A stretch of 64,000 nucleotides of DNA from NCBI RefSeq assembly GCF_001194135.2, contig NC_068984.1, positions 84,062,517-84,126,516 of the forward strand. The letters run 5' to 3'. Position numbers and translations under genes: made by a program. This document shows, one piece after another, positions 298-62,172 of the stretch. The notes beneath the pieces are model-generated. The model saw only the letters and a program-made list of their open reading frames with translations. It did no database searches and had not been told where the DNA came from. The first letter of the stretch is position 1; every line of letters starts with the position of its first letter. This DNA comes from Octopus bimaculoides (taxonomy: Eukaryota).

Positions 298-757
298 ATA
301 TATATGTATATGTATATATATACATATATATATATATACATATATATATATACATATATATATATACATATACATATATATATANNNNNNNNNNNNNNNN
401 NNNNNNNNNNNNNNNNNNNNNNNNNNNNNNNNNNNNNNNNNNNNNNNNNNNNNNNNNNNNNNNNNNNNNNNNNNNNNNNNNNNNNNNNNNNNNNNNNNNN
501 NNNNNNNNNNNNNNNNNNNNNNNNNNNNNNNNNNNNNNNNNNNNNNNNNNNNNNNNNNNNNNNNNNNNNNNNNNNNNNNNNNNNNNNNNNNNNNNNNNNN
601 NNNNNNNNNNNNNNNNNNNNNNNNNNNNNNNNNNNNNNNNNNNNNNNNNNNNNNNNNNNNNNNNNNNNNNNNNNNNNNNNNNNNNNNNNNNNNNNNNNNN
701 NNNNNNNNNNNNNNNNNNNNNNNNNNNNNNNNNNNNNNNNNNNNNNNNNNNNNNNNN

Positions 758-5075: not shown

Positions 5076-5082
5076 GATCACC

Positions 5083-6360
5083 ATCATCATCATCATCATC
5101 ATTTAACGTCCACTTTCCATGCTAGCATGAGTTGGACGATTTGACTGAGGACTGGTGAACTGGATGACTGCACCAGGCTCCAATCTGATCTGGCAGAGTT
5201 TCTACAGCTGGATGCCCTTCCTAATGCCAACCACTCGGAGAGTGTAGTGGATGCTTTTACATGCCCCCAGCACGAGGGCCAGTCATGCGGTACTGGCAAC
5301 GGCCACACTCAAATGGTGGTTTTTATGTGCCACCTGCACAGGAGTCAGTCCAGTGGCACTGGCAATGACCTCGCTTGAATGTTTTGATCACGTGCCACCG
5401 GCACAAGTGCCAGTAAGGCGACACTGGTAACGATCATGCTCAAATGGTGTGATTTACATGCCACTGGCACGGAAGCCAGACAGGTGCTCTGGTAGTGATC
5501 CTGCTTGGATGGTGCTGTTAGTGCTCCACTGGCACGGGTGCCAGTCATTGAATTTGGTTCAGTTTTGATTTCACTTGCCCCAACAGCTCTTTNNNNNNNN
5601 NNNNNNNNNNNNNNNNNNNNNNNNNNNNNNNNNNNNNNNNNNNNNNCAAAGAAGGAAAGGTATGCATAAGTGGGTTGGCTACACCCCTGGTAAAGGCCAC
5701 GGGTTATGGTCTCACTTGTCTTGCTGGGTCTTCTCACACACAGCATATTTCCAAAGGTCTTGGTCAGAAGTCATTGCCTCGGTGAGGCCTAATGTTCAAA
5801 GGTCGTGCTTCACCACCTCATCCCAGGTCTACCTCCTTCACAGGCACCCTCAGCCGCTAGGCTGTGGCACTTTTTCACACAGCTATCCTCATCCATTCTC
5901 GCCAAATGACCATACCAGTGCAATCGTCTCTCTTGCACTCCACATCTGATGCTTCTTATATCCAACTTTTCTCTCAGGGTGCTTGCACTCTGTCATGTAT
6001 GCACACTGACATTACACATCCATTGAAGCATACCAGTTTCATTCTTTGCGAGCTTACGCATGTCCTCAGCAGTCACGGCCCATGTTTCACTGCCATGTAG
6101 CATAGCTGTTCATACACATGCGTCATACAGTCTGCCTNNNNNNNNNNCTGCCATGTAGCATAGCTGTTCATACACATGCGTCATACAGTCTGCCTTTTAC
6201 TCTGAGCGAGAGGCCCTTTCTCACCAGCAGAGGTAAGAGCTCTCTGAGCTTTACCCAAACTATTCTTATTCTAGCAGCTACACTTTCAGCGTACCCTCCC
6301 CCACTACTGACTTGGTCGCCTAAGTAACGGAAGCTATCAACTACTTCTAGTTTTTCTCCT
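5083..6360 (-). mobile_element. 5'-truncated RTE LINE: ORF2 C-terminus, 3' UTR with tandem hairpin units, (GAT)n tail
   Basis: Minus strand gives EVVDSFRYLGDQVSSGGG...RVKGRLYDACV...LHGSETWAV...ERRLHWYGHLARMDEDSCVKKC...WDEVVKHDL...LTEAMTSDQDLWKYAV, collinear (across a short N gap) with the family B tail. Confidence 0.92.
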
Positions 6361-8207
6361 TGGAATGTGGCAGACAGGTTTATTGTTGTAAGTAGGGTGG
6401 GGGATTACAGAGGAATAATGGAAGAGACTGGGGAAAGAGGAGGGGAACAAGTAGTGTTAGGGAGATGATGGGTAGAAGGGATCCAGTGCTATCTTACATT
6501 ACATCTTCAACATTTTATGTTTGTTTTCCATGCTGGCATGGGGTTGGCTGGCTCATCAGGATCCAGATTAGTTCTCATTGGAGTTATAGTTCCTTTAAGT
6601 CATGGGTTTACATCTTAGTTTTGGCATAGTTTTTGTGGCTGGATGTCTTTCCTAACACCAACTATTTTACAGAGTGTACTGGGTACATTATTGCAGCACC
6701 AGCACCAAAGAGGTTATCATGCTCCAGCAGGACTAAATAATCCTCTCAACTTTGTTAGGCTTTATCAGTAGTATGTACTCACAGCCAGCCACAAGTGTAG
6801 ACGAGATTTGTTAACTCTGATATACAGGAAACAATGAATAAAACATGAGTGTGTGTGTGCACATATATTATTATTATTATTATTATTGGCAGAATTGTTA
6901 GAACATCAGACAAAATACCTTGGAGTATTTAGTTATGGTTCTTTACATTCTGAGTTCAAATCCCAAAGTTTTGGAGTCAATAAAAAAGTATCAGTCAAGT
7001 GCTAGAGTTCATTTTAATTGTCTAATCTGTCTCTAAAATTTTGGTTTCATGCCTATGAAAGAAATTATAATTATGAGGTTGGTAGCTTGGCAAATAAAAT
7101 ACCCCTTGCAGTATTTAGTTATGTTCCTTTACATATTGAGTAAAATTCCACTGACCAATAAAATAAGTACCAGCCATGTACTGGGATTTAATTTTTTCTA
7201 CAATACCTTCCTCTCCTATGTTGGTAGGATAGAAATCCTTATTATTTCCATATGATTGGTGTAACAGAAAAACTACTTCACCGCATTTAGATATGTCATT
7301 TTACAATCTAGATTTCAGTACCTGTCAATTGATTGACTGTTCTTTGTTACAAAATTTTGGGGCTTTTTTTAAATTTAATCTAGGAATCTTTAGTACTATC
7401 ATAAGAGTGGTGGATTAGTAGAATCAGTAGGGAGTGGCCAACAAAATATTTAACAAATTTTGATTATGTCAATTTATCTTCTGAGTTAAAACTCTCACCA
7501 GATTCAAAATTTACCTAGCATTCTTCAGTGGGTGGGTGGAGCAGTAAAATCAGTGCGAGTCAAGTATTTGGGTTTATTTAATTGCTACATCACTCTTATA
7601 AAATGTGTGGCCTTATTCTAAGAGAGGTACAAGACCACAAATTTAGAGAGAAGGTAAAACTGAGAGTGAAACCACAGTTTTGTTACTGTGTTAGAAATAC
7701 TTATTATTTTCATATTTTAGAAACTTGAGATTGTGTACATAATATTTTGGTTTCTAGGTGGAAGATATGTGGCTTCATAGCCATATGCCCTGTGCACTAC
7801 TCTAAAGCTGATTCTCCACAACTTACCTCACAAAGACATGTCAATGAGAGAGCCTCTATATAGTTGCTCAGTGTTATATATAGCAATGAAATTTCCTTCA
7901 AACCATAACCTATTGTCTTAGAAAAAAAGAATGACATTGGATAATGTAGTCTTAGATACACAAAGTCGGAATAAAAGATGGGATGGTCACAGCTAGAACA
8001 CTTTTGATTGACGATCTGCTGGACTGAGTCCAAACAAAAAATTCACAAATTAACTGTGTTTTTAGGTATGACACTGAAATTTCTTCTATCCTTACATGGT
8101 ACAACAATCTCTTGCTAAACTCCTCACTTGTGAATTCTATTTCACTCTGACATCTTGGGTTGAAAGTTTTCATTGTAGTATGTATAGAAAGGGTTTGTAC
8201 CTACCGC

Positions 8208-8614
8208 TGACTGGCTTCCATTCCGGTGGCACATAAAAAGCACCATTTGACCGTGATCGTAACCAGCATTGCCTCACTGGCATTTGAACCGTTGGCACCT
8301 GAAAAACAACATTCAAGCAAGGTCATTGCCAGTGCCGCTGGACTGGCTCCTGTGCAGGTGGCACATAAAAAACACCATTTGAGCATGGCTGTCGCCAGTA
8401 CTGCCTGACTGGCTCTTGTGCTGGTGGCACGTAAAAGCACTCACTACACTCTCAGAGTGGTTGGCATTAGGAAGGGCATCCAGCTGTAGAAACTCTGCCA
8501 GATCAGACTAGAGCCTGGTGCAGTCACCTGGCTCGCCAGTCCTCAGTCAAACCGTCCAACCCATGCTAGCATGGAAAGCAGACGTTAAACGATGATGATG
8601 ATGATGATGATGAT
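8208..8614 (+). mobile_element. RTE 3' UTR copy (family B) with about 3-4 tandem units
   Basis: Repeated GGTGGCACATAAAA units, then GAGTGGTTGGCATTAGGAAGGGCATCC...GACGTTAAACGATGATG. Confidence 0.9.
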
Positions 8615-26085: not shown

Positions 26086-27934
26086 CTAAGATATAAAAAA
26101 CGGGGGAAAAAAAAACTTTACAAGTTGGAAATCCAAGCAAAATAAAGTGAAGAAAATAGTGGAACCAGTTTGAAATACAAAATATCTCCATCTTCTCATG
26201 GCAAACTAACTTAATCCTTACATTTACAACTATCACATGATGTCAAGGCAAGGAGATAGTAACACACACATATATACACAAAAGGCTTCTTTCAGTTTCC
26301 ATTTACCATACCCAATTACAAGGTTCAGGGATATAGAAGACATCTGCCCAAGATGCAATACATTGGGACTGAACCCAGAACCATGTGGTTGGGAAGCAAA
26401 CATCTTACCACACACACACATAGTAGGTGCAGTATGGCTTCAGTTCACAACCATGAATCCCCAAGTCTGATTCCACTCTATGTTATATCTTGAGCAAATG
26501 TCATTTTCTATAGCCTTGGATTGACCCATAACTTGTGAGTAAAATTGGGTAGATGGAAACTGTATGGAAGACCATCAAGTGGACTGTTCCAATAATTGAA
26601 AACAAACAGCATTATACACTTCACCAAACTGATTCTATCTGAAAATCACCTTAAGGTTACACATAGCTGTGGAATGCTCAGCAACGTACATACTAGTTCA
26701 GGAGTTCAATGAACTCCTGAATTAGTATGTACATTTCTGAAATGAAAAGAACTACCACTACATATACATCATCATCATTTAGTGCCCACTTATCCATGCT
26801 TGCATGGGTTGGACAGAGTTTATTTGAGGCAGATTTTCTATGGTTGGATGCCTTTTCCAAGCAAGGTAATATCTCTACATGGCCAGTTATGTTCTCAGAA
26901 AATATTAGAAATGAATGACATTGCTTGTATGAGAGTGACACTCATTTACAACTATTACATGATGTCAAAGACAGACAGACACACAAAAAAAGTGTGCGTG
27001 TATGTGTATATATAATAATAAAAAAAGTGACAGGTTTGTTTTTATGATAAAAACAGTTTTATATTAAATTGAAAGATTACTCAATACATTTGGTAGTCTA
27101 CAAATTTATTATTCTTTAACAAGAATATTATTGACGGTGCCTTCGAAGTTTTGGCCACATATATAAACACATACATGATGGGCTTTTTAAAGTTTCCACC
27201 AACCAAATCAACTCACAAGGCTTTGATCAGTTGGGGCTATAATAAAAAAATATTTGCTGAAGGTACCATGAAGTGGAACTGAACCCAGAACCTGTCTGTG
27301 TGTGAATTCCTAAAACTCAAAAAGTACCCAACTGATTTCATTCAAATTTTACACATGCATTACTTAGGGTCCATGGGGCAAAAATTTTTCAACTTCTTGC
27401 CTAATTAGGATTCAGGAGCAGATAAACCACATTTTTAAAGCATTTTGGCAGCATTAAGGCCTGTAACTTAAGTATCCAGTCGCTTTCCTCCAAATTTGCA
27501 ACACACATTAATCAGGCTCCTCAAATTGCTATTGACTAAAAAAATTTCTNNNNNNNNNNNNNNNNNNNNNNNNNNNNNNNNNNNNNNNNNNNNNNNNNNN
27601 NNNNNNNNNNNNNNNNNNNNNNNNNNNNNNNNNNNNNNNNNNNNNNNNNNNNNNNNNNNNNNNNNNNNNNNNNNNNNNNNNNNNNNNNNNNNNNNNNNNN
27701 NNNNNNNNNNNNNNNNNNNNNNNNNNNNNNNNNNNNNNNNNNNNNNNNNNNNNNNNNNNNNNNNNNNNNNNNNNNNNNNNNNNNNNNNNNNNNNNNNNNN
27801 NNNNNNNNNNNNNNNNNNNNNNNNNNNNNNNNNNNNNNNNNNNNNNNNNNNNNNNNNNNNNNNNNNNNNNNNNNNNNNNNNNNNNNNNNNNNNNNNNNNN
27901 NNNTCCCTTCCTCATTTAGTTGGACAAATAAATA

Positions 27935-36779: not shown

Positions 36780-37629
36780 GGGTGCAGTGAATATATCATT
36801 GTCTAAGTTAGGCAAAAATTAAAACAACACTGACATCTCACTTTATCAGATATATTTACCAAAATTACATAAAAATATCTTGGAATACTAAAGAGTAAAT
36901 TTATTCAATAAAATCACTATTGGCTTCAACCATGGACTCTAGACAACTTCAGAATCTCCTGCAACTCTTGTGGATGGTCTCCTTGTTTAAGTTGGTGAAT
37001 GCTGCCATAATCCTTGCCTACAAGGAGTTTTGCTGGTATCTTGCTCAACTGCATCCCACACATAATTATCAAGCGGGTAGCAGCCTGGGGAGTTAGGTCG
37101 CCAGATGTTAGGGGTGGTGTGGTCACAGAAATTGTCTGACAGCCATAACTAGATTCACTTGTTTATGTGGCATGGTGCAGAGTCCTGTTACCAGATATAG
37201 GGTCTTCTAGCAGCCACCCTCTTGACCCAGGGCAGCACTACTACCTCCTCCAGGCACTTGATATATACCTCTGTATTGAGTCTGAGGTCGATTGGGAAGA
37301 TGAATGTAGGTATAACGTTGCCATCACTAGTGATCACTCCAAACACCATGATGTTGACTGGATATACATGTTTTGGAGACACAGCAAGCCAATGGTTGTT
37401 CTGTGTGTTCATCATCTGTTCGTATTGGAGCTTTCAGTGCAAATGCCAAGCAGTACAGCAAGTCATTTCCAGATTTCTGGCAGAGTGAATTGCGTCATGG
37501 TGCTGTTTTTGTCACAGATGGTGCCCAACTGACCCTACTATATTGTGTAGTTGACAAAATCAAAAACAAACAATGCTCATATGCGAAATTAAAAATATAA
37601 AATGGAGACGATTTACCCATCGCACCGTG
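36780..37629 (-). mobile_element. Internally deleted maT (DD37D-like) Tc1/mariner element
   Basis: Remnants NIMVFGVITSDG...RLNTEVYIKCLEEV...RPYIW*QDSAPCH...ARIMAAFTNLNKETI...EANSDFIE; terminus CACGGTGCGATGGGTAAATCG. Confidence 0.85.
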
Positions 37630-41415: not shown

Positions 41416-41508
41416 CTGAATCCAAGGGTTGCTCTTGCAGCTAAGAGCATTGTGCAAACATTTATCTGATAGATGATCTAAACCAGGCTCTATACGAAAT
41501 TCATAACT
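41416..41508 (-). CDS. NDC1: NDC1 exon 9 (93 nt, phase 0 to 0)
   Basis: SYEFRIEPGLDHLSDKCLHNALSCKSNPWIQ, matching AHVFPVQPP...DECLPKVLNS; TTAG / GTAAAC. Confidence 0.92.
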
Positions 41509-42026
41509 CTAAGCAGAAAAAGAAAAAGTTAGAACAAAACTTACAAATACTGTCAAATAGACCGAAGTATTATTATAAAATCTTATCTTTCTTTCATTGC
41601 CTTTTCTAAGTTATCGGACATTTCCCATTTAACAAATTTTCACACAAATTAACTTAGTTTATATATCAACTTCAGATATTTTGTTGTGTATGTAGACTGT
41701 ACACTTATCAATTGTCAGGAAAAGGTGGTATACCATTCACATCCATAGATCCTATGGTGTAGTTTTTAGGGAGACACAGTCCTTCTAGCTACCAATCTCC
41801 TTATGGGACTAAATATCTCTATAGCTTTGATTTTCTTAATAGGTTAAAGAGAAGGGAAGGAGCAGTTGACACGGTCTTTGTAGACCCTTCCAGATGAGTA
41901 AGGTTGATGTAGTTGATACTCACCACAAACATCTGCAATTTAATGGCTCATAAGGATCAGTATCTATCCAAATCTCTCCCTGGATATGACATCCATTTAT
42001 TTAAACTAGTCAAATCAACAGAGACA

Positions 42027-42250
42027 GTGCTATTAGCAAGTATCTTCTACTATAGCCCCACATTGATCAGTGTCAGATTATACAGAAAGCTATTGCATGT
42101 GTATATCTTTGAGTGACATGTACTTGAGAAAATTGATAAACCAGAGCTTTTTAACAAAAATACCCTCTGGTATTTTTCAACCTGAGATACACTGGTGTTC
42201 CCTTGTCACTCGTACACTTGTATATGTTATGATTAATCATTGAGAATCCT
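42027..42250. repeat. Left arm of 224-bp inverted duplication
   Basis: Reverse complement of 42586-42809, with 2 mismatches found by eye. Confidence 0.95.
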
Positions 42251-42337
42251 ATAGACGAATTAATAAAATGGCTAAAATATATATTTCACAAGTTAGTAAT
42301 AATGAAATGAAAATAAAACTTTTTCTTTTTCACATAC

Positions 42338-42470
42338 CTCAGTTAAATATGTCCTTAGTAAAACGGCAGCTAAATGCCAGATGAAATACATGTAGGTTCC
42401 AAGGAAAAATGACTGCAAAAACAATTCTGGTTGAAGAAGACTCTGAACACTGGACAAATTTGTTTCTGGG
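42338..42470 (-). CDS. NDC1: NDC1 exon 8 (133 nt, phase 2 to 0)
   Basis: PETNLSSVQSLLQPELFLQSFFLGTYMYFIWHLAAVLLRTYLTE, matching PLDTVSGLLNLSLL...WILFKIYATE; TTTCTCTGCAG / GAG-GTATGT. Confidence 0.93.
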
Positions 42471-42585
42471 CTGCAGAGAAATTTGTAAGAAGGTTATTTA
42501 AGAAAAGACAAGTCTTAACTTTAAGGTAATTACTTACTCTTTTTTAATTTATCATAAAACTGTGAACAATACCATTGTTGAGTAA

Positions 42586-42809
42586 AGGATTCTCAATGAT
42601 TAATCCTAACATATACAAGTGTACGAGTGACAAGGGAACACCAGTGTATCTCAGGTTGAAAAATACCAGAGGGTATTTTTGTTAAAAAGCTCTGGTTTAT
42701 CAATTTTCTCAAGTACATGTCACTCAAAGATATACACATGCAATAGCTTTCTGTATAATCTGACACTGATCAATGTGGGGCTATAGTAGAAGATACTTGC
42801 TAATGGCAC
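42586..42809. repeat. Right arm of 224-bp inverted duplication
   Basis: Reverse complement of 42027-42250; its outer end runs on into a family A SINE head that continues to about 42877. Confidence 0.95.
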
Positions 42810-43143
42810 CACATAGTGGGATTAAAGAAAGCTATGTGTTACTGAACCATGTTTTATCACACAGCCATTCCTGCATCCAGCAAGATAAAATTTATTTTTA
42901 TGTAATAACATTTACAGTAAAATATATTGTGATAAAGATTACACTCACATGAGGATAAACAAATAAAATAGTTTCTAACACATCAGACAATACTAATTTG
43001 ATAAGGAAGGATGGAGCAGTTAATTAAATTGACCTCAGTATTTGATTGGTACAATATCAACCTCAGAAAGATGAAAAGCAAAGTTGACTTTAAGATTTGA
43101 GCTCAACTGTCATGACTGAATGTGACATGGCATAAAATCTTAC

Positions 43144-43195
43144 ACAGGCTGATGGCTGAAAGTGTTGGTGGAGAGTGTTGTTGATATTGTCAGTC
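43144..43195 (-). CDS. NDC1: NDC1 exon 7 (52 nt, phase 1 to 2)
   Basis: AG / GTAAGA; GLTISTTLSTNTFSHQP; best candidate found with the required phases and the expected leading Gly; weak sequence similarity. Confidence 0.7.
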
Positions 43196-44103
43196 CTATA
43201 CTTGACAAGTACTAACTTTATCTACCCTTATCAAAGTTACCTCCAGCTTAATTTGAACTTAAAACATGTCTTTACTAAATGCACAACAAGGTATTTACTC
43301 CCTGTCTTCACTGATTCTGTGATCCACTGCTTAAGGATGAATACATATAACATAGAAATAGAAAAATATTGGTTTCAAATTTTGTCACAAGACCAGCAAT
43401 TGGGGTGGGGATACATTAATAATATCAACTCTAGTGTCCAACTGGTTGCTTATTTTATCGACCCAGGAAGGATGAAAGGCAAAGTTGACCTCAGGGGTAT
43501 TTAAACTAACTCAGAACATAAAGTCGGAAGAAATGCCACTAAGCATTTTTACAGGCATGATAACCATTCTGTCAGCTTGCCACCTTAGAAATGGGAAAAT
43601 ATTAAAATAATGATATAATGAAGGAGGTTGTTTCAGTAAGGAGTGATTCTAGCTGGAACACATTAAATAATTGTTCTACGTACTTCCATGACCCGTGACT
43701 CCAATCTTGGCGGGGGCAATTTTTGTTACAATACCTAAATGTGAAGGTAAGATGTGAAAGTTTGCAAGGTTAGCCAATGGGAAAGAGCTTGTTACTGATG
43801 AACCAACAAGAAAGCTTCTGCACAGTTGCTCAACTTGTTAGAAGTAAAGGCCAAATATTTCTCAAACCACATCTTAGGATTTAAAAAAAGGCCACACTGA
43901 ATAATGTGGTCTGAGATTCACTATGCCTGATTTTTAAGCATGTGGAAAACAGCAAGAAGAGTTTTCCTCACATTATTTACAGTTTTATATTTTGTCAATA
44001 TGAGTTTTCAAGAGATTTTACCATTTTTAATGCCAATGTGTATTTTTTGTTAGTACAATAAGAATTACTACCAAATGTATTAACATAGTAGATGTCAGGT
44101 TGA

Positions 44104-44335
44104 AGGCGGTGAGCTGGCAGAAACGTTAGCAAGCCAGGCGAAATGCTTAGCGGTATTTCGTCTGCCGTTACGTTCTGAGTTCAAATTCCGCTGAGGTCAA
44201 TTTTGCCTTTCATCCTTTCGGGGTCGATAAATTAAGTACCAGTTACGCACTGGGGTCGATGTAATTGACTTAATCCCTTTGTCTGTCCTTGTTTGTCCCC
44301 TCTATGTTTAGCCCCATGTGGGCAATAAAGAAATA
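44104..44335 (+). mobile_element. Full-length tRNA-headed SINE family C (Meta-domain-like)
   Basis: GGCGGTGAGCTGGCAGAA head, B box GTTCAAATTCC, TTTGCCTTTCATCCTTTCGGGGTCGATAAA core; perfect 14-bp TSD AGATGTCAGGTTGA (44090-44103, 44336-44349). Confidence 0.93.
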
Positions 44336-45031
44336 AGATGTCAGGTTGATGCTGCAGTGCTGTGGTAGAGATGATATCTATCTAATTATCAACTAATTAA
44401 TCTCACTGACAAGAGTAACTTCATTCAATGAGAAAAAAAAGTTGAGGTGGTGATGCTAGAACATGATAAAAATACAGGTTAAGGAAGCCTAAGCTAACCA
44501 AAGGCTCATCAGTTAAATACTCAGACCAGTATCCTTAAATCTCATAGGATTAGACCAATTGTGGTTGTCTTAAGGATGAAGATCTTAAATAAAAGTAGAT
44601 CATTACAGATATGAAATAGGTTTCTTTCGAAAATTATAAAAAAATTGAAGATGATTATATTACCAGATTGAGAGTCGACAGAGATGAGCAGTTAAGTCTC
44701 GAGGAAGATGTCCTAATAAAGATAAGTAAAAAATAAAAAGACAGTTTAGTTGGAAATATTTCAGATTTAGTTACAATAATAGATTAATTCAATTCAGGAA
44801 TTTTTCCTTAACCCTCTTGAATGTTCATATCTTTTAAGAAGTAAGGTAGGTACAACTTAGATTTGAAAATAGTTGAAGGATTTCAGTGGACAATGGCTTA
44901 TTCTTTACCATAATGTTATTTTCCAAAGGAGGAAGAATGGTAAAATTTCCATAACCTAGATAAGAAAGATCCACTTTAGGTACATAGCAATCATTTAAGA
45001 AGTACATGGTGCGTAAAGAAGTGCCAATCTC

Positions 45032-46149: not shown

Positions 46150-46880
46150 TTATTCTATACCAGTTGACAAAATTTCATTAGCATAGGTGGATGGCACTAC
46201 TGTATCACATGATTTCACTGTATTGTGGATCATCAGAAGCAGGAAGTCAAGCATTGAAGACCAGACAGAAAAATCAGTCAAACCTGCATAGAATAATACT
46301 GGCCAAACAGCCAGTGATGTTGTGCAAAGCCCATGAAGTGTGTATAAATTAGCTATTAGCATCATAAGCAGCCTTTGTACTGAATATTAATTATCACAGC
46401 CGACTGGCACCCATGCCAACGTCGTCTCCTTCATTGGACACGAAACTCGGCTTGCGAAGACCTGTTGGCGAAAGCAAAATCATGATGGCACCTGTGCCCA
46501 GCGTCGCCTTCCTGGCACTTGTGCCGGTGACATGTGCAAAGACATTCGAGCGAGATCGTTGCCAGTGCCGCTGGACTGGCTCCTGTGCAGGTGGCACGTA
46601 AAATACAACATTTGGAGCGTGGCTGTTGCTAGTACCGCCTGACTAGCCTTCGTGCCGGTGGCACGTAAAAGCACCCACTCCACTCTCGGAGTGGTTGGCG
46701 TTAGGAAGGGCATCCAGCTGTAGAAACTTTGCCAGATCAGATTGGAGCCTGGTGTAGCCATCTGGTTCACCAGTCCTCAGTCAAATCGTCCAACCCATGC
46801 TAGCACGGAAAGTGGATGTTAAACGATGATGATGACGATGATGAAACTAACCTGGATATGTTTTTTCATAATGCTGAAGG
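46150..46880. mobile_element. MITE copy A, interrupted by a family B insertion (46396-46845)
   Basis: 46180-46390 aligns to 46977-47180; the alignment resumes after the insertion (CTAACCTGGAT at about 46850 vs about 47195). Confidence 0.7.
46396..46845 (+). mobile_element. Young RTE 3' UTR copy (family B) with 3 tandem units
   Basis: CpG-rich, intact core CTCGGAGTGGTTGGCGTTAGGAAGGGCATCC, (GAT)n tail. Confidence 0.9.
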
Positions 46881-47450: not shown

Positions 47451-47920
47451 TACTCTTTTACTTGTTTCAGTCATTTGACTGTGGCCATGCTGGAGCACCG
47501 CCTTTAGTCGAGCAAATCGACCCCAGGACTTATTCTTTGGAAACCTAGTACTTATTCTATCGGTCTCTTTGGCCGAACCGCTAAGTTACGGGGACGTAAA
47601 CACACCACCATTGGTTGTCAAGNNNNNNNNNNNNNNNNNNNNNNNNNNNNNNNNNNNNNNNNNNNNNNNNNNNNNNNNNNNNNNNNNNNNNNNNNNNNNN
47701 NNNNNNNNNNNNNNNNNNNNNNNNNNNNNNNNNNNNNNNNNNNNNNNNNNNNNNNNNNNNNNNNNNNGCAAACACAGACACACAAACATATACACATATA
47801 TACGACAGGCTTCTTTCAGTTTCTGTCTACCAAATCCACTCACAAGGCTTTGGGGAATGAACCCGGAACCATGTGGTTGGTAAGTAAGCTACTTACCACA
47901 CAACCAATCCTGCACCTATA
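47451..47920 (-). mobile_element. Young SINE family A (with internal assembly gap)
   Basis: 3' part differs from the 48797-49169 copy at about 5 of 155 positions. Confidence 0.92.
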
Positions 47921-48166: not shown

Positions 48167-48275
48167 CAAGAAAGTAGAATATCAGGTAAAAACCTAGCAG
48201 CTGTTTGAAAATTTGAGCAGCAGATTCAAATAATACTGGAACTAGTTGACTTTTAACTTGAAAGAACTTGGCTTG
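48167..48275 (-). CDS. NDC1: NDC1 exon 6 (109 nt, phase 0 to 1)
   Basis: QAKFFQVKSQLVPVLFESAAQIFKQLLGFYLIFYFL, matching QYKFLRFRRSL...FCILYYFL; TTTTCCAG / GTAAGT. Confidence 0.93.
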
Positions 48276-48796
48276 CTGGAAAAGATGTTAAGTGGTTTTC
48301 AAATAGATGTTTCTGGATGCATTGCAAGTGAGTAGCTATGGTCATTCATAAACGAAAGGTACATGTAAAAGTTGTCACCAGTAAGAGTATTATCAATCAA
48401 TGTCAAGTACTGGAAAGCCAAGGTAAGATTCTTGCAAGTTGAACTTATGACCCAGTTTTGACTTGGAGATAGTAACAATTTCATTTAACTTACACCATTA
48501 AAATCTTTAATGAAAGTATGAAAGCTATACATCCTCATTTCCATTTCCTATACAACAAAAGCCTTATATATGTGAAAGAAACCAATATTTATTTATTTCC
48601 TATAACTGAGATAAATAAAGTCAATTGAGATATTTATTCGTAATCAGTGGCGTCTGTCAATGGTTGATTTTGGATAGAAAAGAAACGAGAGGGGTTATGC
48701 TCATATCCTTTTCAAGGACATTACTTACATAACTGAAATAATTCAGATTGGGAATCAAAGCCAGTATGTGAGCTGTTACTAAAACTTTAATGTATA

Positions 48797-48958
48797 GGCG
48801 CAGGAGTGGCTGTGTGGTCAGTAGCTTGCTTACCAACCACATAGTTCTGGGTTCATTCCCACTGTGTGGCACCTTGGGCAAGTGTCTTCTACTATAGTCT
48901 CGGGCCGACCAAAGCCTTGTGAGTGGATTTGGTAGACAGAAACTGAAAGAAGCCCGTC

Positions 48959-48998
<40 letters not shown>

Positions 48999-49169
48999 TT
49001 GTGTGTTTACGTCCCCGTAACTTAGTGGTTCGGCAAAAGAGACCGATAGAATAAGTACTAGGCTTACAAAGAATAAGTCCTGGGGTCGATTTGCTCGACT
49101 GAAGGCGGTGCTCCAGCATGGCCACAGTCAAATGACTGAAACAAGTAAAAGAGTAAAGAGTAAAGAGTA
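48797..49169 (+). mobile_element. Full-length young SINE family A (CORE-like, OR1/OR2-like)
   Basis: A box TGGCTGTGTGG, B box GGTTCATTCC, CORE-like GGCACCTTGGGCAAGTG, internal (GT)n, (TAAAGAG)n tail. Family name tentative. Confidence 0.92.
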
Positions 49170-51984: not shown

Positions 51985-52766
51985 CTGTTTAAATGAAACA
52001 GAATATAAACAATATAAATGACATTGAAACATTGAACATGAAGTTCAACACAGGAAGAAGTCATGGGATAAAAAGGTTTATCTGCTACAGATAATTTATT
52101 AAGAAAGGATCTCTAGTTCTTCTGTAAGTTTATAGTGATATTAACTGTAAATTTTCCCCTTCTCTTCAATTGTCTTAAGGTGATATTGTGGAGTTAGCTC
52201 TGGGTCTACTGTTGTAATCATTGGACTATTTAAAAAAGGTGGAAAAAAAAAAAGACTTAGAGGAGGAGCAGTTGTTATTCTCAAAGATATCTGACCCAAA
52301 ATTTTGCAATGGCATGGACTCAACTCACAGCACACTCATGATCTGAATGGTGGTGTTAAACTAGATGACAGGTCCTTAGAGACCTAAAAATGACAACACT
52401 GTTATTCTGAGACAAACCAATACATTAGTGGTTATAACACCAAACTCTGATGGTAAAATAATGATTCTAATTTCAACCCAAAGACAAGTTGAAGGGTATC
52501 AGTAAAACCTTATATTAGGAAAATAGTCTAAAAAATGTATTTAAAAAAAAGGGCAACTCTCAAAATTTGAACAAATATTCAAAAATTACCTACAAGTCTC
52601 TAGTCTGGAGAGGAATTTCTTTCCAAGCAATCTCCCCTGATTAAACAATCAAAAATAATATATCTAATACAACTGTGTTAATGAATTTACTGATTCAGTG
52701 TTTATTAAATATCTAAAATGATTTGCCAAGTGGAAATAATGATATGACAATATTAACAGACTAAGT

Positions 52767-52982
52767 AAGGTGACGAGCTGGCAGAAATGTTAGCACACCA
52801 GGCAAAATGCTTAGAGGTATTTTGTTTGCCTTTACATTCCAAGTTCAAATTCTGCTGAGGTCAACTTTGCCTTTCATCCTTTCAGGGTTGATAAATTAAG
52901 TACCAGTTGCATACTGAGCTCATCTAATTGATTGCCCCACTCTCCCACAAAATTTCAGGCCTTGTGCCTAGAGTAGAAAGGA
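52767..52982 (+). mobile_element. SINE family C, older copy
   Basis: Same head and core as 44104; 17-bp TSD with 2 mismatches (52750-52766, 52983-52999). Confidence 0.88.
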
Positions 52983-54134
52983 ATATTAATGGACTAAGTT
53001 TTCACTGGAAACTGAATTTTGAATCCATTAATTTGTGTTTGAACATATCAGTGGTATTACTTTAGTCGTTTGGATACAACCCACCTGAGAAGATCACTTG
53101 TTTTAAGATACAAAATGGCCCATTTTAATGCACTCGTATTTAAATTAAAACTTTACATCATAATTTTATGCAAGAACTTTTAGTTATGTTCCAAATAGCA
53201 ACTTAATGCACTTGTTAATGACAAAGTTATTTTATTAAATCCATCCGAAATTTTGATTACTTTCAAAATCAATTGAACCATATAAGCAGTGTATTTCATT
53301 AAAAATATAGTCATAAAAGAGTTAATGTTGAATTTTCCCAAAAACTTAAAAACAGAGGTAGATTAAAAGTACATTACCAATAATCTGTTTCAGTCAGCAT
53401 TTCAAGTTTTATTGTACTACTAATTTCAAAGAATTTATTCAAGTTTTTCAAAATTTATATCATAGGCCAGGTGACTTACTTGATTACTTGAAAAATACTT
53501 CATAGATGAAAGCAGCTATTAAAGCCAGGTACAGCCTAAGAGGGCTATACTAATACTGTAATATTTCAAAACTTTTTTATTCTACTCATCTTTGTGTAGA
53601 TATAAACATTCACATTACAAGCACATACATACTATGTGAAAATTTTGATTACTACACAAAGACCATAGGTGAACTAAAACCCGATCAACTAACAGTAGAG
53701 TGTTTACTGATTAGGCTACTAAATTTGGTCAAAATTGTTGTTGACTAATATGGGAGTAATTCTCTAAAATATCAAAACACTTAAGACTTATACCAAATCA
53801 GCAATTTAAATGTAGGTTGAAACAAACCCCAAATTTTCATGAAACTATGTGTGCCATATTGAAGATGTTTCTGAGAAGTTGGTCACCCACCCTGTCCAAT
53901 CCTCTGTACCACCCACCTTACATTCACCTATTTGTACCTTGAGGGTATGGCCTAGTACATCTTTATTACCATACTCTCTCTTTCCAAATGGGGTAACCAT
54001 GTAGCTCCTTTACAGCAAGACACTTGTTTCTCTCCCTCTATCATAGCTTAACCTCTCATCCCCTGACACAAAGCCACCTCCCTCAATACCAATCCCCTTC
54101 TCAGTTGAGGTCTTTGTTTTGCAAGTTACTTGGT

Positions 54135-61824: not shown

Positions 61825-62172
61825 TCATCATCATCATCATCGTTTAACGTCCACTTTCCATGCTAGCATGGGTTGGACGATTTGACTGCGGACTGGTGAA
61901 ACCAGATGGCTACACCAGGCTCCAATCTGATTTGGCAGAGTTTCTACAGCTGGATGCCCTTCCTAACGCCAACCACTCCAAGAGTGTAGTAGGTGCTTTT
62001 ACGTGCCACTGGCACAAAGGCCAGTCAGGCGGTACTGGCAACGACAACGCTCAAAATGGTGTATTTTATGTGCCACCCGCACAAGAGCCAGTCCAGGGGC
62101 ACTGGCAACGATCTCACTCGAAAGTCCTTACACATGCCACGGGCACAAGTGCCAGTAAGGCGACGCTGATAG
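61825..62172 (-). mobile_element. RTE 3' UTR copy (family B) with 2-3 tandem units
   Basis: (ATC)n, TTTAACGTCC, GGATGCCCTTCCTAACG, then TTTTACGTGCCAC units. Confidence 0.9.

What the first reader, a model, noticed from the sequence alone, without database searches (positions are those of the whole stretch)
42027..42809. Near-perfect 224-bp inverted duplication encloses NDC1 exon 8
Seen: 42027-42250 and 42586-42809 are reverse complements with 2 mismatches. The 335-bp loop holds exon 8 (133 nt) with its acceptor tract and donor; the arms end 87 and 115 nt from the exon. The arms are mostly unique intronic sequence and stop partway through a SINE that continues only beyond the right arm, so the left arm is a recent templated inverted copy, not a transposon TIR. 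Established: reverse-complementary intron flanks promote back-splicing and exon skipping, long perfect dsRNA is an ADAR and Dicer substrate, and coleoid cephalopods edit RNA heavily. Inference: a newly born RNA-structure switch in an essential nucleoporin. Skipping 133 nt frameshifts the mRNA (likely NMD), and editing of the stem could loosen it and restore inclusion.
Basis: partly seen in the sequence, partly recalled or inferred. Interest (0 to 1): 0.8.

Follow-up and report, generated by a model that had tools for sequence, protein, structure and literature searches.

The report
Octopus-specific inverted copy flanking NDC1 exon 8
In the California two-spot octopus, a single DNA-copying slip pasted a 220-base backwards copy of nearby intron sequence next to exon 8 of the nuclear-pore gene NDC1; this made a near-perfect hairpin around the exon that two sister octopus species lack, and nothing yet shows that it changes how the gene is read.

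Summary
Arms 42027-42250 and 42586-42809 are reverse complements with 2 mismatches. They enclose a 335-nt loop holding a 133-nt minus-strand exon (42338-42470), which is exon 8 of NDC1.

The window is Octopus bimaculoides (GCA_001194135.2, CM046604.1).

The orthologous loci of O. vulgaris and O. sinensis, both built from long reads, contain the right arm and its old SINE relic but have a clean empty site where the left arm sits. The junctions show 3-nt and 1-nt microhomology and loss of one base. There is no target-site duplication, tail or terminal repeat. Both arms share 12 substitutions and a 7-bp indel relative to the sister species, and each arm has one private change.

The left arm is therefore a lineage-specific, microhomology-mediated templated inverted insertion (template switch, MMBIR type). 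It is not a transposon and is unlikely to be an assembly artefact.

All seven annotated NDC1 isoforms in three Octopus species include exon 8. The exon is short for circularisation, and the repeat has been tolerated long enough to pick up changes. Skipping exon 8 would create an immediate TGA stop.

This is a clean example of a known mutational process, of moderate interest.

The parts
42027..42250 (.). Left arm: the derived, O. bimaculoides-specific inverted copy. It lies in intron 8 of NDC1, at +88 to +311 from the exon 8 donor. The unambiguous inserted bases are 42030-42249.
   Evidence: It is absent at the orthologous site of O. vulgaris (L001 44703/44704) and O. sinensis (L002 43136/43137). 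It is 99% reverse-complementary to 42586-42809.
42586..42809 (.). Right arm: the template. It lies in intron 7, at -116 to -339 from the exon 8 acceptor, in its original context.
   Evidence: It is present, collinear with its flanks, in O. vulgaris (L001 44149-44365) and O. sinensis (L002 42578-42797), and the SINE relic runs uninterrupted across its outer edge.
42338..42470 (-). NDC1 exon 8, 133 nt, encoding (C)PETNLSSVQSLLQPELFLQSFFLGTYMYFIWHLAAVLLRTYLTE. It starts with 1 nt that completes a codon and ends in phase 0.
   Evidence: It has AG/GT boundaries. It matches Pfam Ndc1_Nup at E 9.7e-4, positions 233-272, and Xenopus NDC1 7wkk_N residues 245-285. It is 100% identical to O. bimaculoides NDC1.
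42471..42585 (-). Last 115 nt of intron 7 (pyrimidine tract and acceptor), inside the loop.
   Evidence: Read from the sequence; 96.5% identical to O. vulgaris.
42251..42337 (-). First 87 nt of intron 8 (donor GTATGT...), inside the loop.
   Evidence: Read from the sequence; 94.3% identical to O. vulgaris.
42027..42029 (.). Outer junction microhomology GTG, shared by the ancestral target (...CAGAGACAGTG|A|TACAG...) and the template (...TGTG|GTGCCATT...).
   Evidence: Junction comparison of O. bimaculoides, O. vulgaris and O. sinensis.
42250..42250 (.). Inner junction microhomology T. One ancestral base (A, between GTG and TAC) was lost in the event.
   Evidence: The joined O. bimaculoides flanks align collinearly to O. 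vulgaris with a single 1-nt gap.
42725..42878 (-). Old, decayed tRNA-derived SINE relic (head). Its 5' part (42810-42878) lies outside the right arm and its remainder lies inside it. The inner limit near 42725 was judged by eye.
   Evidence: 72-81% matches to other SINE copies in the window, alignment of 12 copies, and presence at the same place in O. vulgaris and O. sinensis.
44664..44712 (-). NDC1 exon 7 (49 nt), ending ...ATCTG.
41416..41508 (-). NDC1 exon 9 (93 nt), starting AGTTATG. Joining exon 7 to exon 9 gives TG|A, a stop codon.

Best explanation
A single replication or repair error on the O. bimaculoides lineage inserted about 220 bp into intron 8 of NDC1. [quoted passage not shown] A 3' DNA end at the site 87 nt downstream of exon 8 annealed through 3 nt (GTG) to the opposite strand about 780 bp away in intron 7. 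It copied 220 nt, consisting of part of an old SINE relic plus adjacent single-copy intron, and returned to its original template through 1 nt (T), losing one base. This is a microhomology-mediated template switch (MMBIR / FoSTeS / templated-insertion type). It instantly created a 224-bp, 99% complementary inverted repeat around exon 8. Shown: the insertion, its local inverted template, the junctions, its absence in two sister species, and its later persistence. Inferred: in the pre-mRNA the two arms pair into a long duplex with exon 8 and both its splice sites in a 335-nt loop. Such a duplex is the kind that ADAR enzymes edit heavily, and it could divert a minority of transcripts to exon 8 skipping (immediate TGA, probably degraded) or, less likely, to a 133-nt circle. 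The main product stays the normal exon-8-containing mRNA, and the element is most likely a tolerated neutral or slightly deleterious by-product, not an evolved switch.
For: The window is identical to O. bimaculoides CM046604.1, and its NDC1 is 100% identical to the species' RefSeq proteins. The empty site is present in both O. vulgaris OX597817.1 and O. sinensis CM016862.1: window 42250 joins directly to 42032, while the left arm matches only the reverse complement of the right-arm orthologue. The O. bimaculoides flanks joined in silico align to O. vulgaris with a 1-nt gap only. The junctions have GTG and T microhomology, with no TSD, no A-tail and no TIR. [quoted passage not shown] Both arms share 12 substitutions and a 7-bp indel relative to O. 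vulgaris/O. sinensis. There is one private change per arm: at 42230 the left arm keeps the ancestral T while the right arm has mutated, and at 42031 the left arm is derived. The copy was therefore made late and has since evolved on its own. The arm interior is single-copy in the window. Of 16 O. bimaculoides-specific indels of 200 bp or more in this locus, this is the only local near-identical copy. The O. bimaculoides vs O. vulgaris/O. sinensis split is put at about 34 Mya (PMC10700109); arm divergence of 0.9% against 5.5% between species gives very roughly 3-6 My. On the RNA side: predicted folding of -466 kcal/mol, z = -45; all annotated isoforms keep exon 8; 30-40-nt inverted repeats suffice for circularisation, but short exons and over-stable hairpins perform poorly (PMC4201285).
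Against: No reads, long or short, and no RNA data could be examined. The left arm therefore rests on one short-read-derived assembly, and every RNA-level consequence is inference. O. vulgaris and O. sinensis are sister species (about 2.5 My apart) and count as one outgroup lineage. The next outgroup, Argonauta, has unalignable introns, so polarity rests on parsimony and on the 99% arm identity. One junction has only 1 nt of microhomology. The event (220 nt copied, template 336-780 bp away) is several times larger than the templated insertions usually catalogued (10-100 nt, template within 100 bp). The exact pathway (replication-fork switch, break repair by MMBIR, or polymerase-theta-type synthesis) cannot be told from sequence.
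Confidence: 0.8

Rival explanations
1. One reading: the new hairpin is a working RNA-structure switch. Pairing of the arms loops out exon 8, causing skipping (frameshift, NMD) or back-splicing. ADAR editing of the stem loosens it and restores inclusion, so NDC1 output is tuned.
For: The geometry is right: the arms are in the two flanking introns, all exon 8 splice signals are in the loop, and the predicted duplex is very stable. Skipping gives an immediate TGA. Inverted intronic repeats promote circularisation (PMC4201285). From general knowledge, exons placed in hairpin loops can be skipped (Solnick 1985) and cephalopods edit RNA heavily.
Against: There are no expression data of any kind. All 7 annotated isoforms in 3 species include exon 8. 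The element arose by a random copying error in an essential gene and is absent from sister species that manage without it. The exon is 133 nt, and exons of 400 nt or less circularised poorly while stronger hairpins sometimes inhibited circle formation. Exon 6 also has inverted SINE flanks, so this architecture is common here.
Confidence: 0.07
2. Assembly artefact: the left arm does not exist in the animal and was created when the short-read assembly, which carries N gaps in the window, was built or gap-filled.
For: The window comes from a fragmented Illumina-based assembly, with 7 N runs in 64 kb and 713,915 contigs (PMC10700109). The only O. bimaculoides locus retrievable (L003) is the same sequence as the window, so there is no independent copy.
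Against: The left arm is not a verbatim copy of the right arm. At 42230 it carries the ancestral base still seen in O. vulgaris and O. sinensis, while the right arm has changed. Both junctions are clean, with microhomology and a 1-nt loss typical of a biological event. The nearest N run is at 47623, 4.8 kb away. Assemblers usually collapse or break at near-identical repeats instead of inventing an inverted copy with unique junctions.
Confidence: 0.07
3. The inverted repeat is ancestral. The O. vulgaris/O. sinensis lineage precisely deleted the left arm, and gene conversion kept the O. bimaculoides arms identical.
For: Only one outgroup lineage is available, so polarity is not formally proven. 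Inverted repeats can be homogenised by template switching (PMC8604942 abstract).
Against: This needs a deletion whose ends coincide to the base with the limits of arm homology, plus sustained conversion over about 34 My. It also leaves unexplained why the left arm ends in the middle of a SINE head.
Confidence: 0.04
4. Mobile element: the arms are the terminal inverted repeats of a foldback or MITE-like transposon, or two independent insertions of one SINE subfamily.
For: The genome is SINE-rich, and other inverted SINE pairs exist nearby. The left arm begins inside the SINE head, which superficially resembles a 5'-truncated retrocopy.
Against: The 'internal' part is a conserved NDC1 exon, and the right arm pre-exists in the sister species. 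There is no TSD, tail or TIR at the left arm, and a base was lost instead. The arm interior has no other copy in the window. The right-arm SINE head is old and decayed, with its box-B region and CpGs eroded, yet the left arm shares every one of those decays. Rfam gives no match.
Confidence: 0.02

Closest known systems
Microhomology-mediated templated inverted insertions (MMBIR 'MMB-TI'; FoSTeS; short template-switch mutations of Loytynoja & Goldman)
   Same: The insertion is the reverse complement of a nearby template on the same chromosome. Microhomology is present at both junctions, there is no TSD, and one event creates a perfect hairpin (PMC8421209; PMC5453318, PMC8794818 and PMC10710096).
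   Different: The scale differs: 220 nt copied from 336-780 bp away, against the usual 10-100 nt with a template within about 100 bp. It is a fixed or at least old germline event that encloses a coding exon. One junction has only 1 nt of microhomology.
Inverted Alu/SINE pairs flanking circularised or skipped exons (Jeck 2013; Zhang 2014; Liang & Wilusz 2014)
   Same: Reverse-complementary sequences in the two introns flanking an exon are predicted to bring its splice sites together (PMC4201285).
   Different: The arms are not two transposon insertions but one local copy. They are 99% instead of about 80-90% complementary. The enclosed exon is only 133 nt, unfavourable for circles in that study. 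No back-splice or skipping evidence exists here.
Experimental 'exon in a hairpin loop' skipping (Solnick 1985; Solnick & Lee 1987; recalled from memory, not read here)
   Same: An internal exon with both splice sites sits in the loop of a long intronic stem.
   Different: Those were engineered constructs. In vivo effects depended on stem length and transcription kinetics. This is a natural allele with unknown effect.
Hairpin-RNA (hpRNA) endo-siRNA loci of Drosophila, and ADAR-hyperedited intronic inverted repeats
   Same: A long, near-perfect intramolecular dsRNA is born by inverted duplication.
   Different: The arms here are intronic, have no other target in the window, and no small-RNA or editing data are available.
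Foldback / MITE transposons
   Same: Two long inverted arms separated by a short spacer.
   Different: There is no TSD and no additional copies, the spacer is a conserved host exon, and one arm pre-exists in sister species.

Membership tests
NDC1 (nucleoporin, Pfam PF09531 Ndc1_Nup) | Protein homology over the whole domain, with collinear exons on one strand | tested here: met
   tblastn maps 14 HSPs in order on the minus strand, 58859 to 24214. The assembled 537 aa are 100% identical to O. bimaculoides NDC1-like proteins, whose cluster carries PF09531. Exon 8 alone hits PF09531 at E 9.7e-4.
Templated inverted insertion by template switching (MMBIR/FoSTeS type) | The inserted sequence is the reverse complement of a nearby sequence on the same molecule | tested here: met
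   222 of 224 nt are complementary, and the template lies 336-780 bp away.
Templated inverted insertion by template switching (MMBIR/FoSTeS type) | Derived state: the insertion is absent at the orthologous site of relatives while the template is present | tested here: met
   [quoted passage not shown] Only one outgroup lineage is available.
Templated inverted insertion by template switching (MMBIR/FoSTeS type) | Microhomology at both switch points | tested here: met
   GTG (3 nt) at the outer junction and T (1 nt) at the inner junction, with 1 nt lost. The 1-nt case is weak.
Templated inverted insertion by template switching (MMBIR/FoSTeS type) | Usual size range (10-100 nt, template within about 100 bp) | tested here: not met
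   220 nt, with the template 336-780 bp away. The range is a search convention, not a mechanistic limit (PMC8421209).
Transposable element (foldback/MITE, or SINE retrocopy) for the left arm | Target-site duplication; terminal repeats or a 3' tail; multiple dispersed copies | tested here: not met
   No TSD (a base is lost), no tail and no TIR. There is no other copy of the arm interior in 64 kb. A genome-wide copy count is not testable with these tools.
Inverted-repeat-driven circRNA / exon-skipping locus | Complementary sequences in both flanking introns able to pair | tested here: met
Inverted-repeat-driven circRNA / exon-skipping locus | Back-splice (8-8) or skip (7-9) junctions in RNA | not testable with these tools
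The annotated isoforms all include exon 8.
ADAR hyper-editing substrate / endo-siRNA hairpin | Clustered A-to-G mismatches in RNA reads; 21-23-nt small RNAs from the arms | not testable with these tools
   No RNA data are available. Only the long duplex prerequisite is met.

The most novel reading that the evidence does not exclude
The hairpin, only a few million years old, already matters. In O. bimaculoides but not in O. vulgaris, a measurable and editing-dependent fraction of NDC1 pre-mRNA skips or circularises exon 8, or the 224-bp duplex is diced into small RNAs. That would be a natural before-and-after pair of species for watching a one-step mutation create RNA-structure-based regulation of an essential nucleoporin.
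Probability: 0.07. Interest if true: 0.65.

Novelty: new member of a known kind. Interest (0 to 1): 0.33.

Why it matters
It is an unusually clean and unusually large natural example of a template-switch mutation creating a long, perfect RNA hairpin in one step. The ancestral empty site is preserved in two sister species, and both junctions are readable to the base. Because the hairpin encloses an exon of an essential gene in an animal with very active RNA editing, the O. bimaculoides / O. vulgaris pair is a ready-made natural experiment. It can show whether a 224-bp intronic duplex affects splicing, circle formation, editing or small-RNA production. If nothing happens, as is most likely, that is still useful: it would show that cells tolerate such a structure around a constitutive exon.

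Tried and rejected
I did not try to reach run-derived data by another route.

(2) A first homologue search with the 44-aa exon peptide found no candidate, although a 43/44-identical Octopus protein is in the collection. This was a word-index miss, not absence.

The exhaustive HMMER search with the exon peptide gave one hit, a decapodiform NDC1 (P0001), which unlocked the gene model by tblastn.

(4) I considered that the insertion split a conserved intronic element, since 41800-42026 is 96.9% identical to O. vulgaris. I rejected this: a 50-nt sliding profile shows 92-98% is the ordinary substitution-level identity of these introns, and the lower figures come from indels.

(5) Argonauta hians as a deeper outgroup: the introns are unalignable and there is no inverted repeat, so it says nothing about the arms.

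(6) Rfam at a permissive threshold over 41500-43300 gave no match.

(7) The look-up of P0014 was not on record. P0009 returned the same assembly as the window, so it adds no independent support.

(8) A SINE retrocopy origin of the left arm (5' truncation) was considered and rejected: no TSD or tail, and the decay of the right-arm relic is shared base for base.

Full report
OBSERVATION

The window holds an inverted repeat with arms 42027-42253 / 42583-42809 (227 nt, 99% complementary). Base by base, 42027-42250 pairs with 42586-42809 with two mismatches, at 42031/42805 and 42230/42606. The next mismatch, at 42251/42585, marks the end of homology. Self-BLAST gives E = 4e-112, and the arm interior has no other copy in the window. 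As RNA, the minus strand 41977-42859 folds into one long stem at -466 kcal/mol, against -185 +/- 6 for shuffles, z = -45.

THE EXON AND THE GENE

- The loop contains a minus-strand exon, 42338-42470. It is 133 nt long and bounded by ...TTCTCTGCAG| and |GTATGTGAAA. It lies 87 nt from the left arm and 115 nt from the right arm.
- Its peptide alone weakly matches Pfam Ndc1_Nup (E 9.7e-4, positions 233-272 of 607). Its best match among solved structures is Xenopus NDC1, residues 245-285.
- An exhaustive HMMER search returned one hit, a 571-aa NDC1. tblastn with that protein laid out 14 collinear pieces on the minus strand from 58859 to 24214.
- The spliced translation is 100% identical to the O. 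bimaculoides 'nucleoporin NDC1-like' proteins. It is 98% identical to the O. vulgaris / O. sinensis protein.
- The window is identical to GCA_001194135.2 chromosome CM046604.1.
- Exons 2 to 7 precede this exon in the window, and exon 1 lies outside it, so 'exon 8' is correct.
- Exon 7 ends ...ATC TG and exon 9 starts A GTT. Skipping exon 8 therefore produces an immediate TGA.

WHAT THE ARMS ARE MADE OF

The window carries at least a dozen copies of a roughly 360-nt tRNA-derived SINE. Only the outer part of the arm matches this family, at 72-81%. On the right that match runs on beyond the arm to about 42878, while on the left it stops at 42027 in the middle of the SINE head. By eye, about 85-100 of the 224 nt are SINE-derived. 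The remaining 125-140 nt have no other copy in the window. The relic is old: its box-B region and its CpGs are eroded.

COMPARATIVE TEST

I fetched the orthologous NDC1 loci of O. vulgaris (L001, OX597817.1) and O. sinensis (L002, CM016862.1).

- In both species, the sequence from window 43051 down to 42250 (SINE relic, right arm, exon 8, first 87 nt of intron 8) is collinear. It is followed directly by the sequence that in O. bimaculoides resumes at 42032.
- The left arm finds only the reverse complement of the right-arm orthologue.
- On the + strand the ancestral site reads ...CAGAGACAGTG-A-TACAGATGAATT...
- O. bimaculoides reads ...CAGAGACAGTG|CTATTAGC...GAGAATCC|TATAGACGAATT...
- The template reads ...TATGTG|GTGCCATTAGC...GAGAATCCT|TTACTC....
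- The junctions therefore share 3 nt (GTG) and 1 nt (T) with the template, and one base (A) was lost. There is no target-site duplication, tail or terminal repeat.
- The O. bimaculoides flanks joined in silico align to O. vulgaris with a single 1-nt gap.

Within the 224 aligned columns, both arms differ from O. vulgaris/O. sinensis in the same way at 12 substitutions and a 7-bp indel. Each arm has one private difference. At 42031 the left arm is derived. At 42230/42606 the left arm keeps the ancestral T and the right arm has changed.

WHAT IT IS

[quoted passage not shown] They also match the template-switch mutations shown to create perfect RNA hairpins in one step (PMC5453318, PMC8794818, PMC10710096).

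The present event is larger than those usually catalogued: 220 nt copied from 336-780 bp away. Of 16 O. bimaculoides-specific indels of 200 bp or more across this locus, the others are SINEs or other repeats, or have no other copy in the window. This is the only local near-identical copy.

Arm divergence is 2/224, against 12/217 between species. The species split is put at about 34 Mya (PMC10700109). This suggests an age of a few million years, with very wide error. The 42031 difference sits next to a junction and may be a copying error made during the event.

RIVAL EXPLANATIONS

- Assembly artefact. This cannot be excluded without reads, and the assembly is short-read based. It is unlikely, however. 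The left arm carries an ancestral base that the right arm has lost, both junctions look biological, and the nearest gap is 4.8 kb away.
- Ancestral repeat with precise loss in the O. vulgaris lineage. This needs a deletion that coincides with the homology limits plus long-term gene conversion.
- Transposon origin. This fails on TSD, copy number and the pre-existence of one arm.
- Deeper outgroup. Argonauta hians has unalignable introns and no inverted repeat, so it is uninformative.

FUNCTION

Everything at the RNA level is inference. The geometry would allow a long duplex that loops out exon 8 with all its splice signals, because the arms lie in introns 7 and 8 and both splice sites are in the loop. 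Inverted repeats of 30-40 nt suffice to promote back-splicing.

Several points argue against a strong effect:
- In the same minigene study, exons of 400 nt or less circularised poorly, and more stable hairpins sometimes inhibited circle formation (PMC4201285).
- All seven annotated isoforms in three Octopus species contain exon 8.
- The structure has persisted long enough for both arms to change.
- Exon 6 of the same gene (48167-48275) is itself flanked by two young, O. bimaculoides-specific SINEs in opposite orientation, 92-96% complementary.

My best estimate is that the duplex forms in part of the transcripts and is probably edited. It may cause low-level skipping, giving TGA and probable decay. 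It is a tolerated by-product and not an evolved switch. I put the probability of a regulated switch at about 0.07.

VERDICT

The origin inference is strongly supported by new comparative evidence. The functional inference is untested. This is a new, large and very clean member of a known class of mutation. It is of moderate interest, mainly as a natural two-species experiment on what a perfect intronic hairpin does to a constitutive exon.

Noticed in passing
window 47451-47920 and 48793-49155 (exon 6 at 48167-48275): NDC1 exon 6 (109 nt) is flanked by two young copies of the octopus SINE in opposite orientation, 92-96% complementary, with an N gap at 47623-47767 inside one copy. Both are absent from O. 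sinensis, and the intron-5 copy is also absent from O. vulgaris. A second exon of the same gene therefore has inverted-repeat flanks, this time made by ordinary SINE insertions.
   Followed up: partly
L004 (Argonauta hians BAAFZT010000053.1) 7758-8223: In Argonauta the last roughly 25 nt of exon 8 plus its 5' splice site (ACATACCTCACTGAG|GTAGGTATT) are repeated about six times in tandem, with a period of about 73 nt, through intron 8 (72-95% identity). This gives a row of potential decoy donor sites. The whole gene is compact there: 14 kb, against about 55 kb in Octopus.
   Followed up: partly
window 37101-37355, minus strand: Open frames resembling a Tc1/mariner-type DDE transposase (...NIMVFGVITSDGNVIPTFIF... 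and ...DNFCDHTTPNIWRPNSPG...) lie inside NDC1 intron 10. The identification was by eye only.
   Followed up: no
window 5077-5383 and 8308-8614: A second long inverted pair (307 nt, 90% complementary, 2.9 kb apart) lies downstream of NDC1. The arms match a repeat family also present at 46498-46844 and 61825-62168, so this is probably two insertions of one element.
   Followed up: no
window 43051-44530: A 1.48-kb block of intron 7 just upstream of the SINE relic is absent from both O. vulgaris and O. sinensis. It contains two copies of another repeat in opposite orientation (43365-43587 and 44103-44268, related to 52766-52987).
   Followed up: no
tool behaviour: The word-indexed protein search returned 'no candidate' for the 44-aa exon 8 peptide, although a protein identical at 43 of 44 residues (O. 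vulgaris/O. sinensis NDC1, P0002) is in the collection. Short queries can therefore give false negatives.
   Followed up: yes
window 385-757, 5593-5646, 27550-27903, 47623-47767 and three 10-N runs: Seven N gaps in 64 kb mark this as a scaffolded short-read assembly. None is within 4.8 kb of the inverted repeat.
   Followed up: yes
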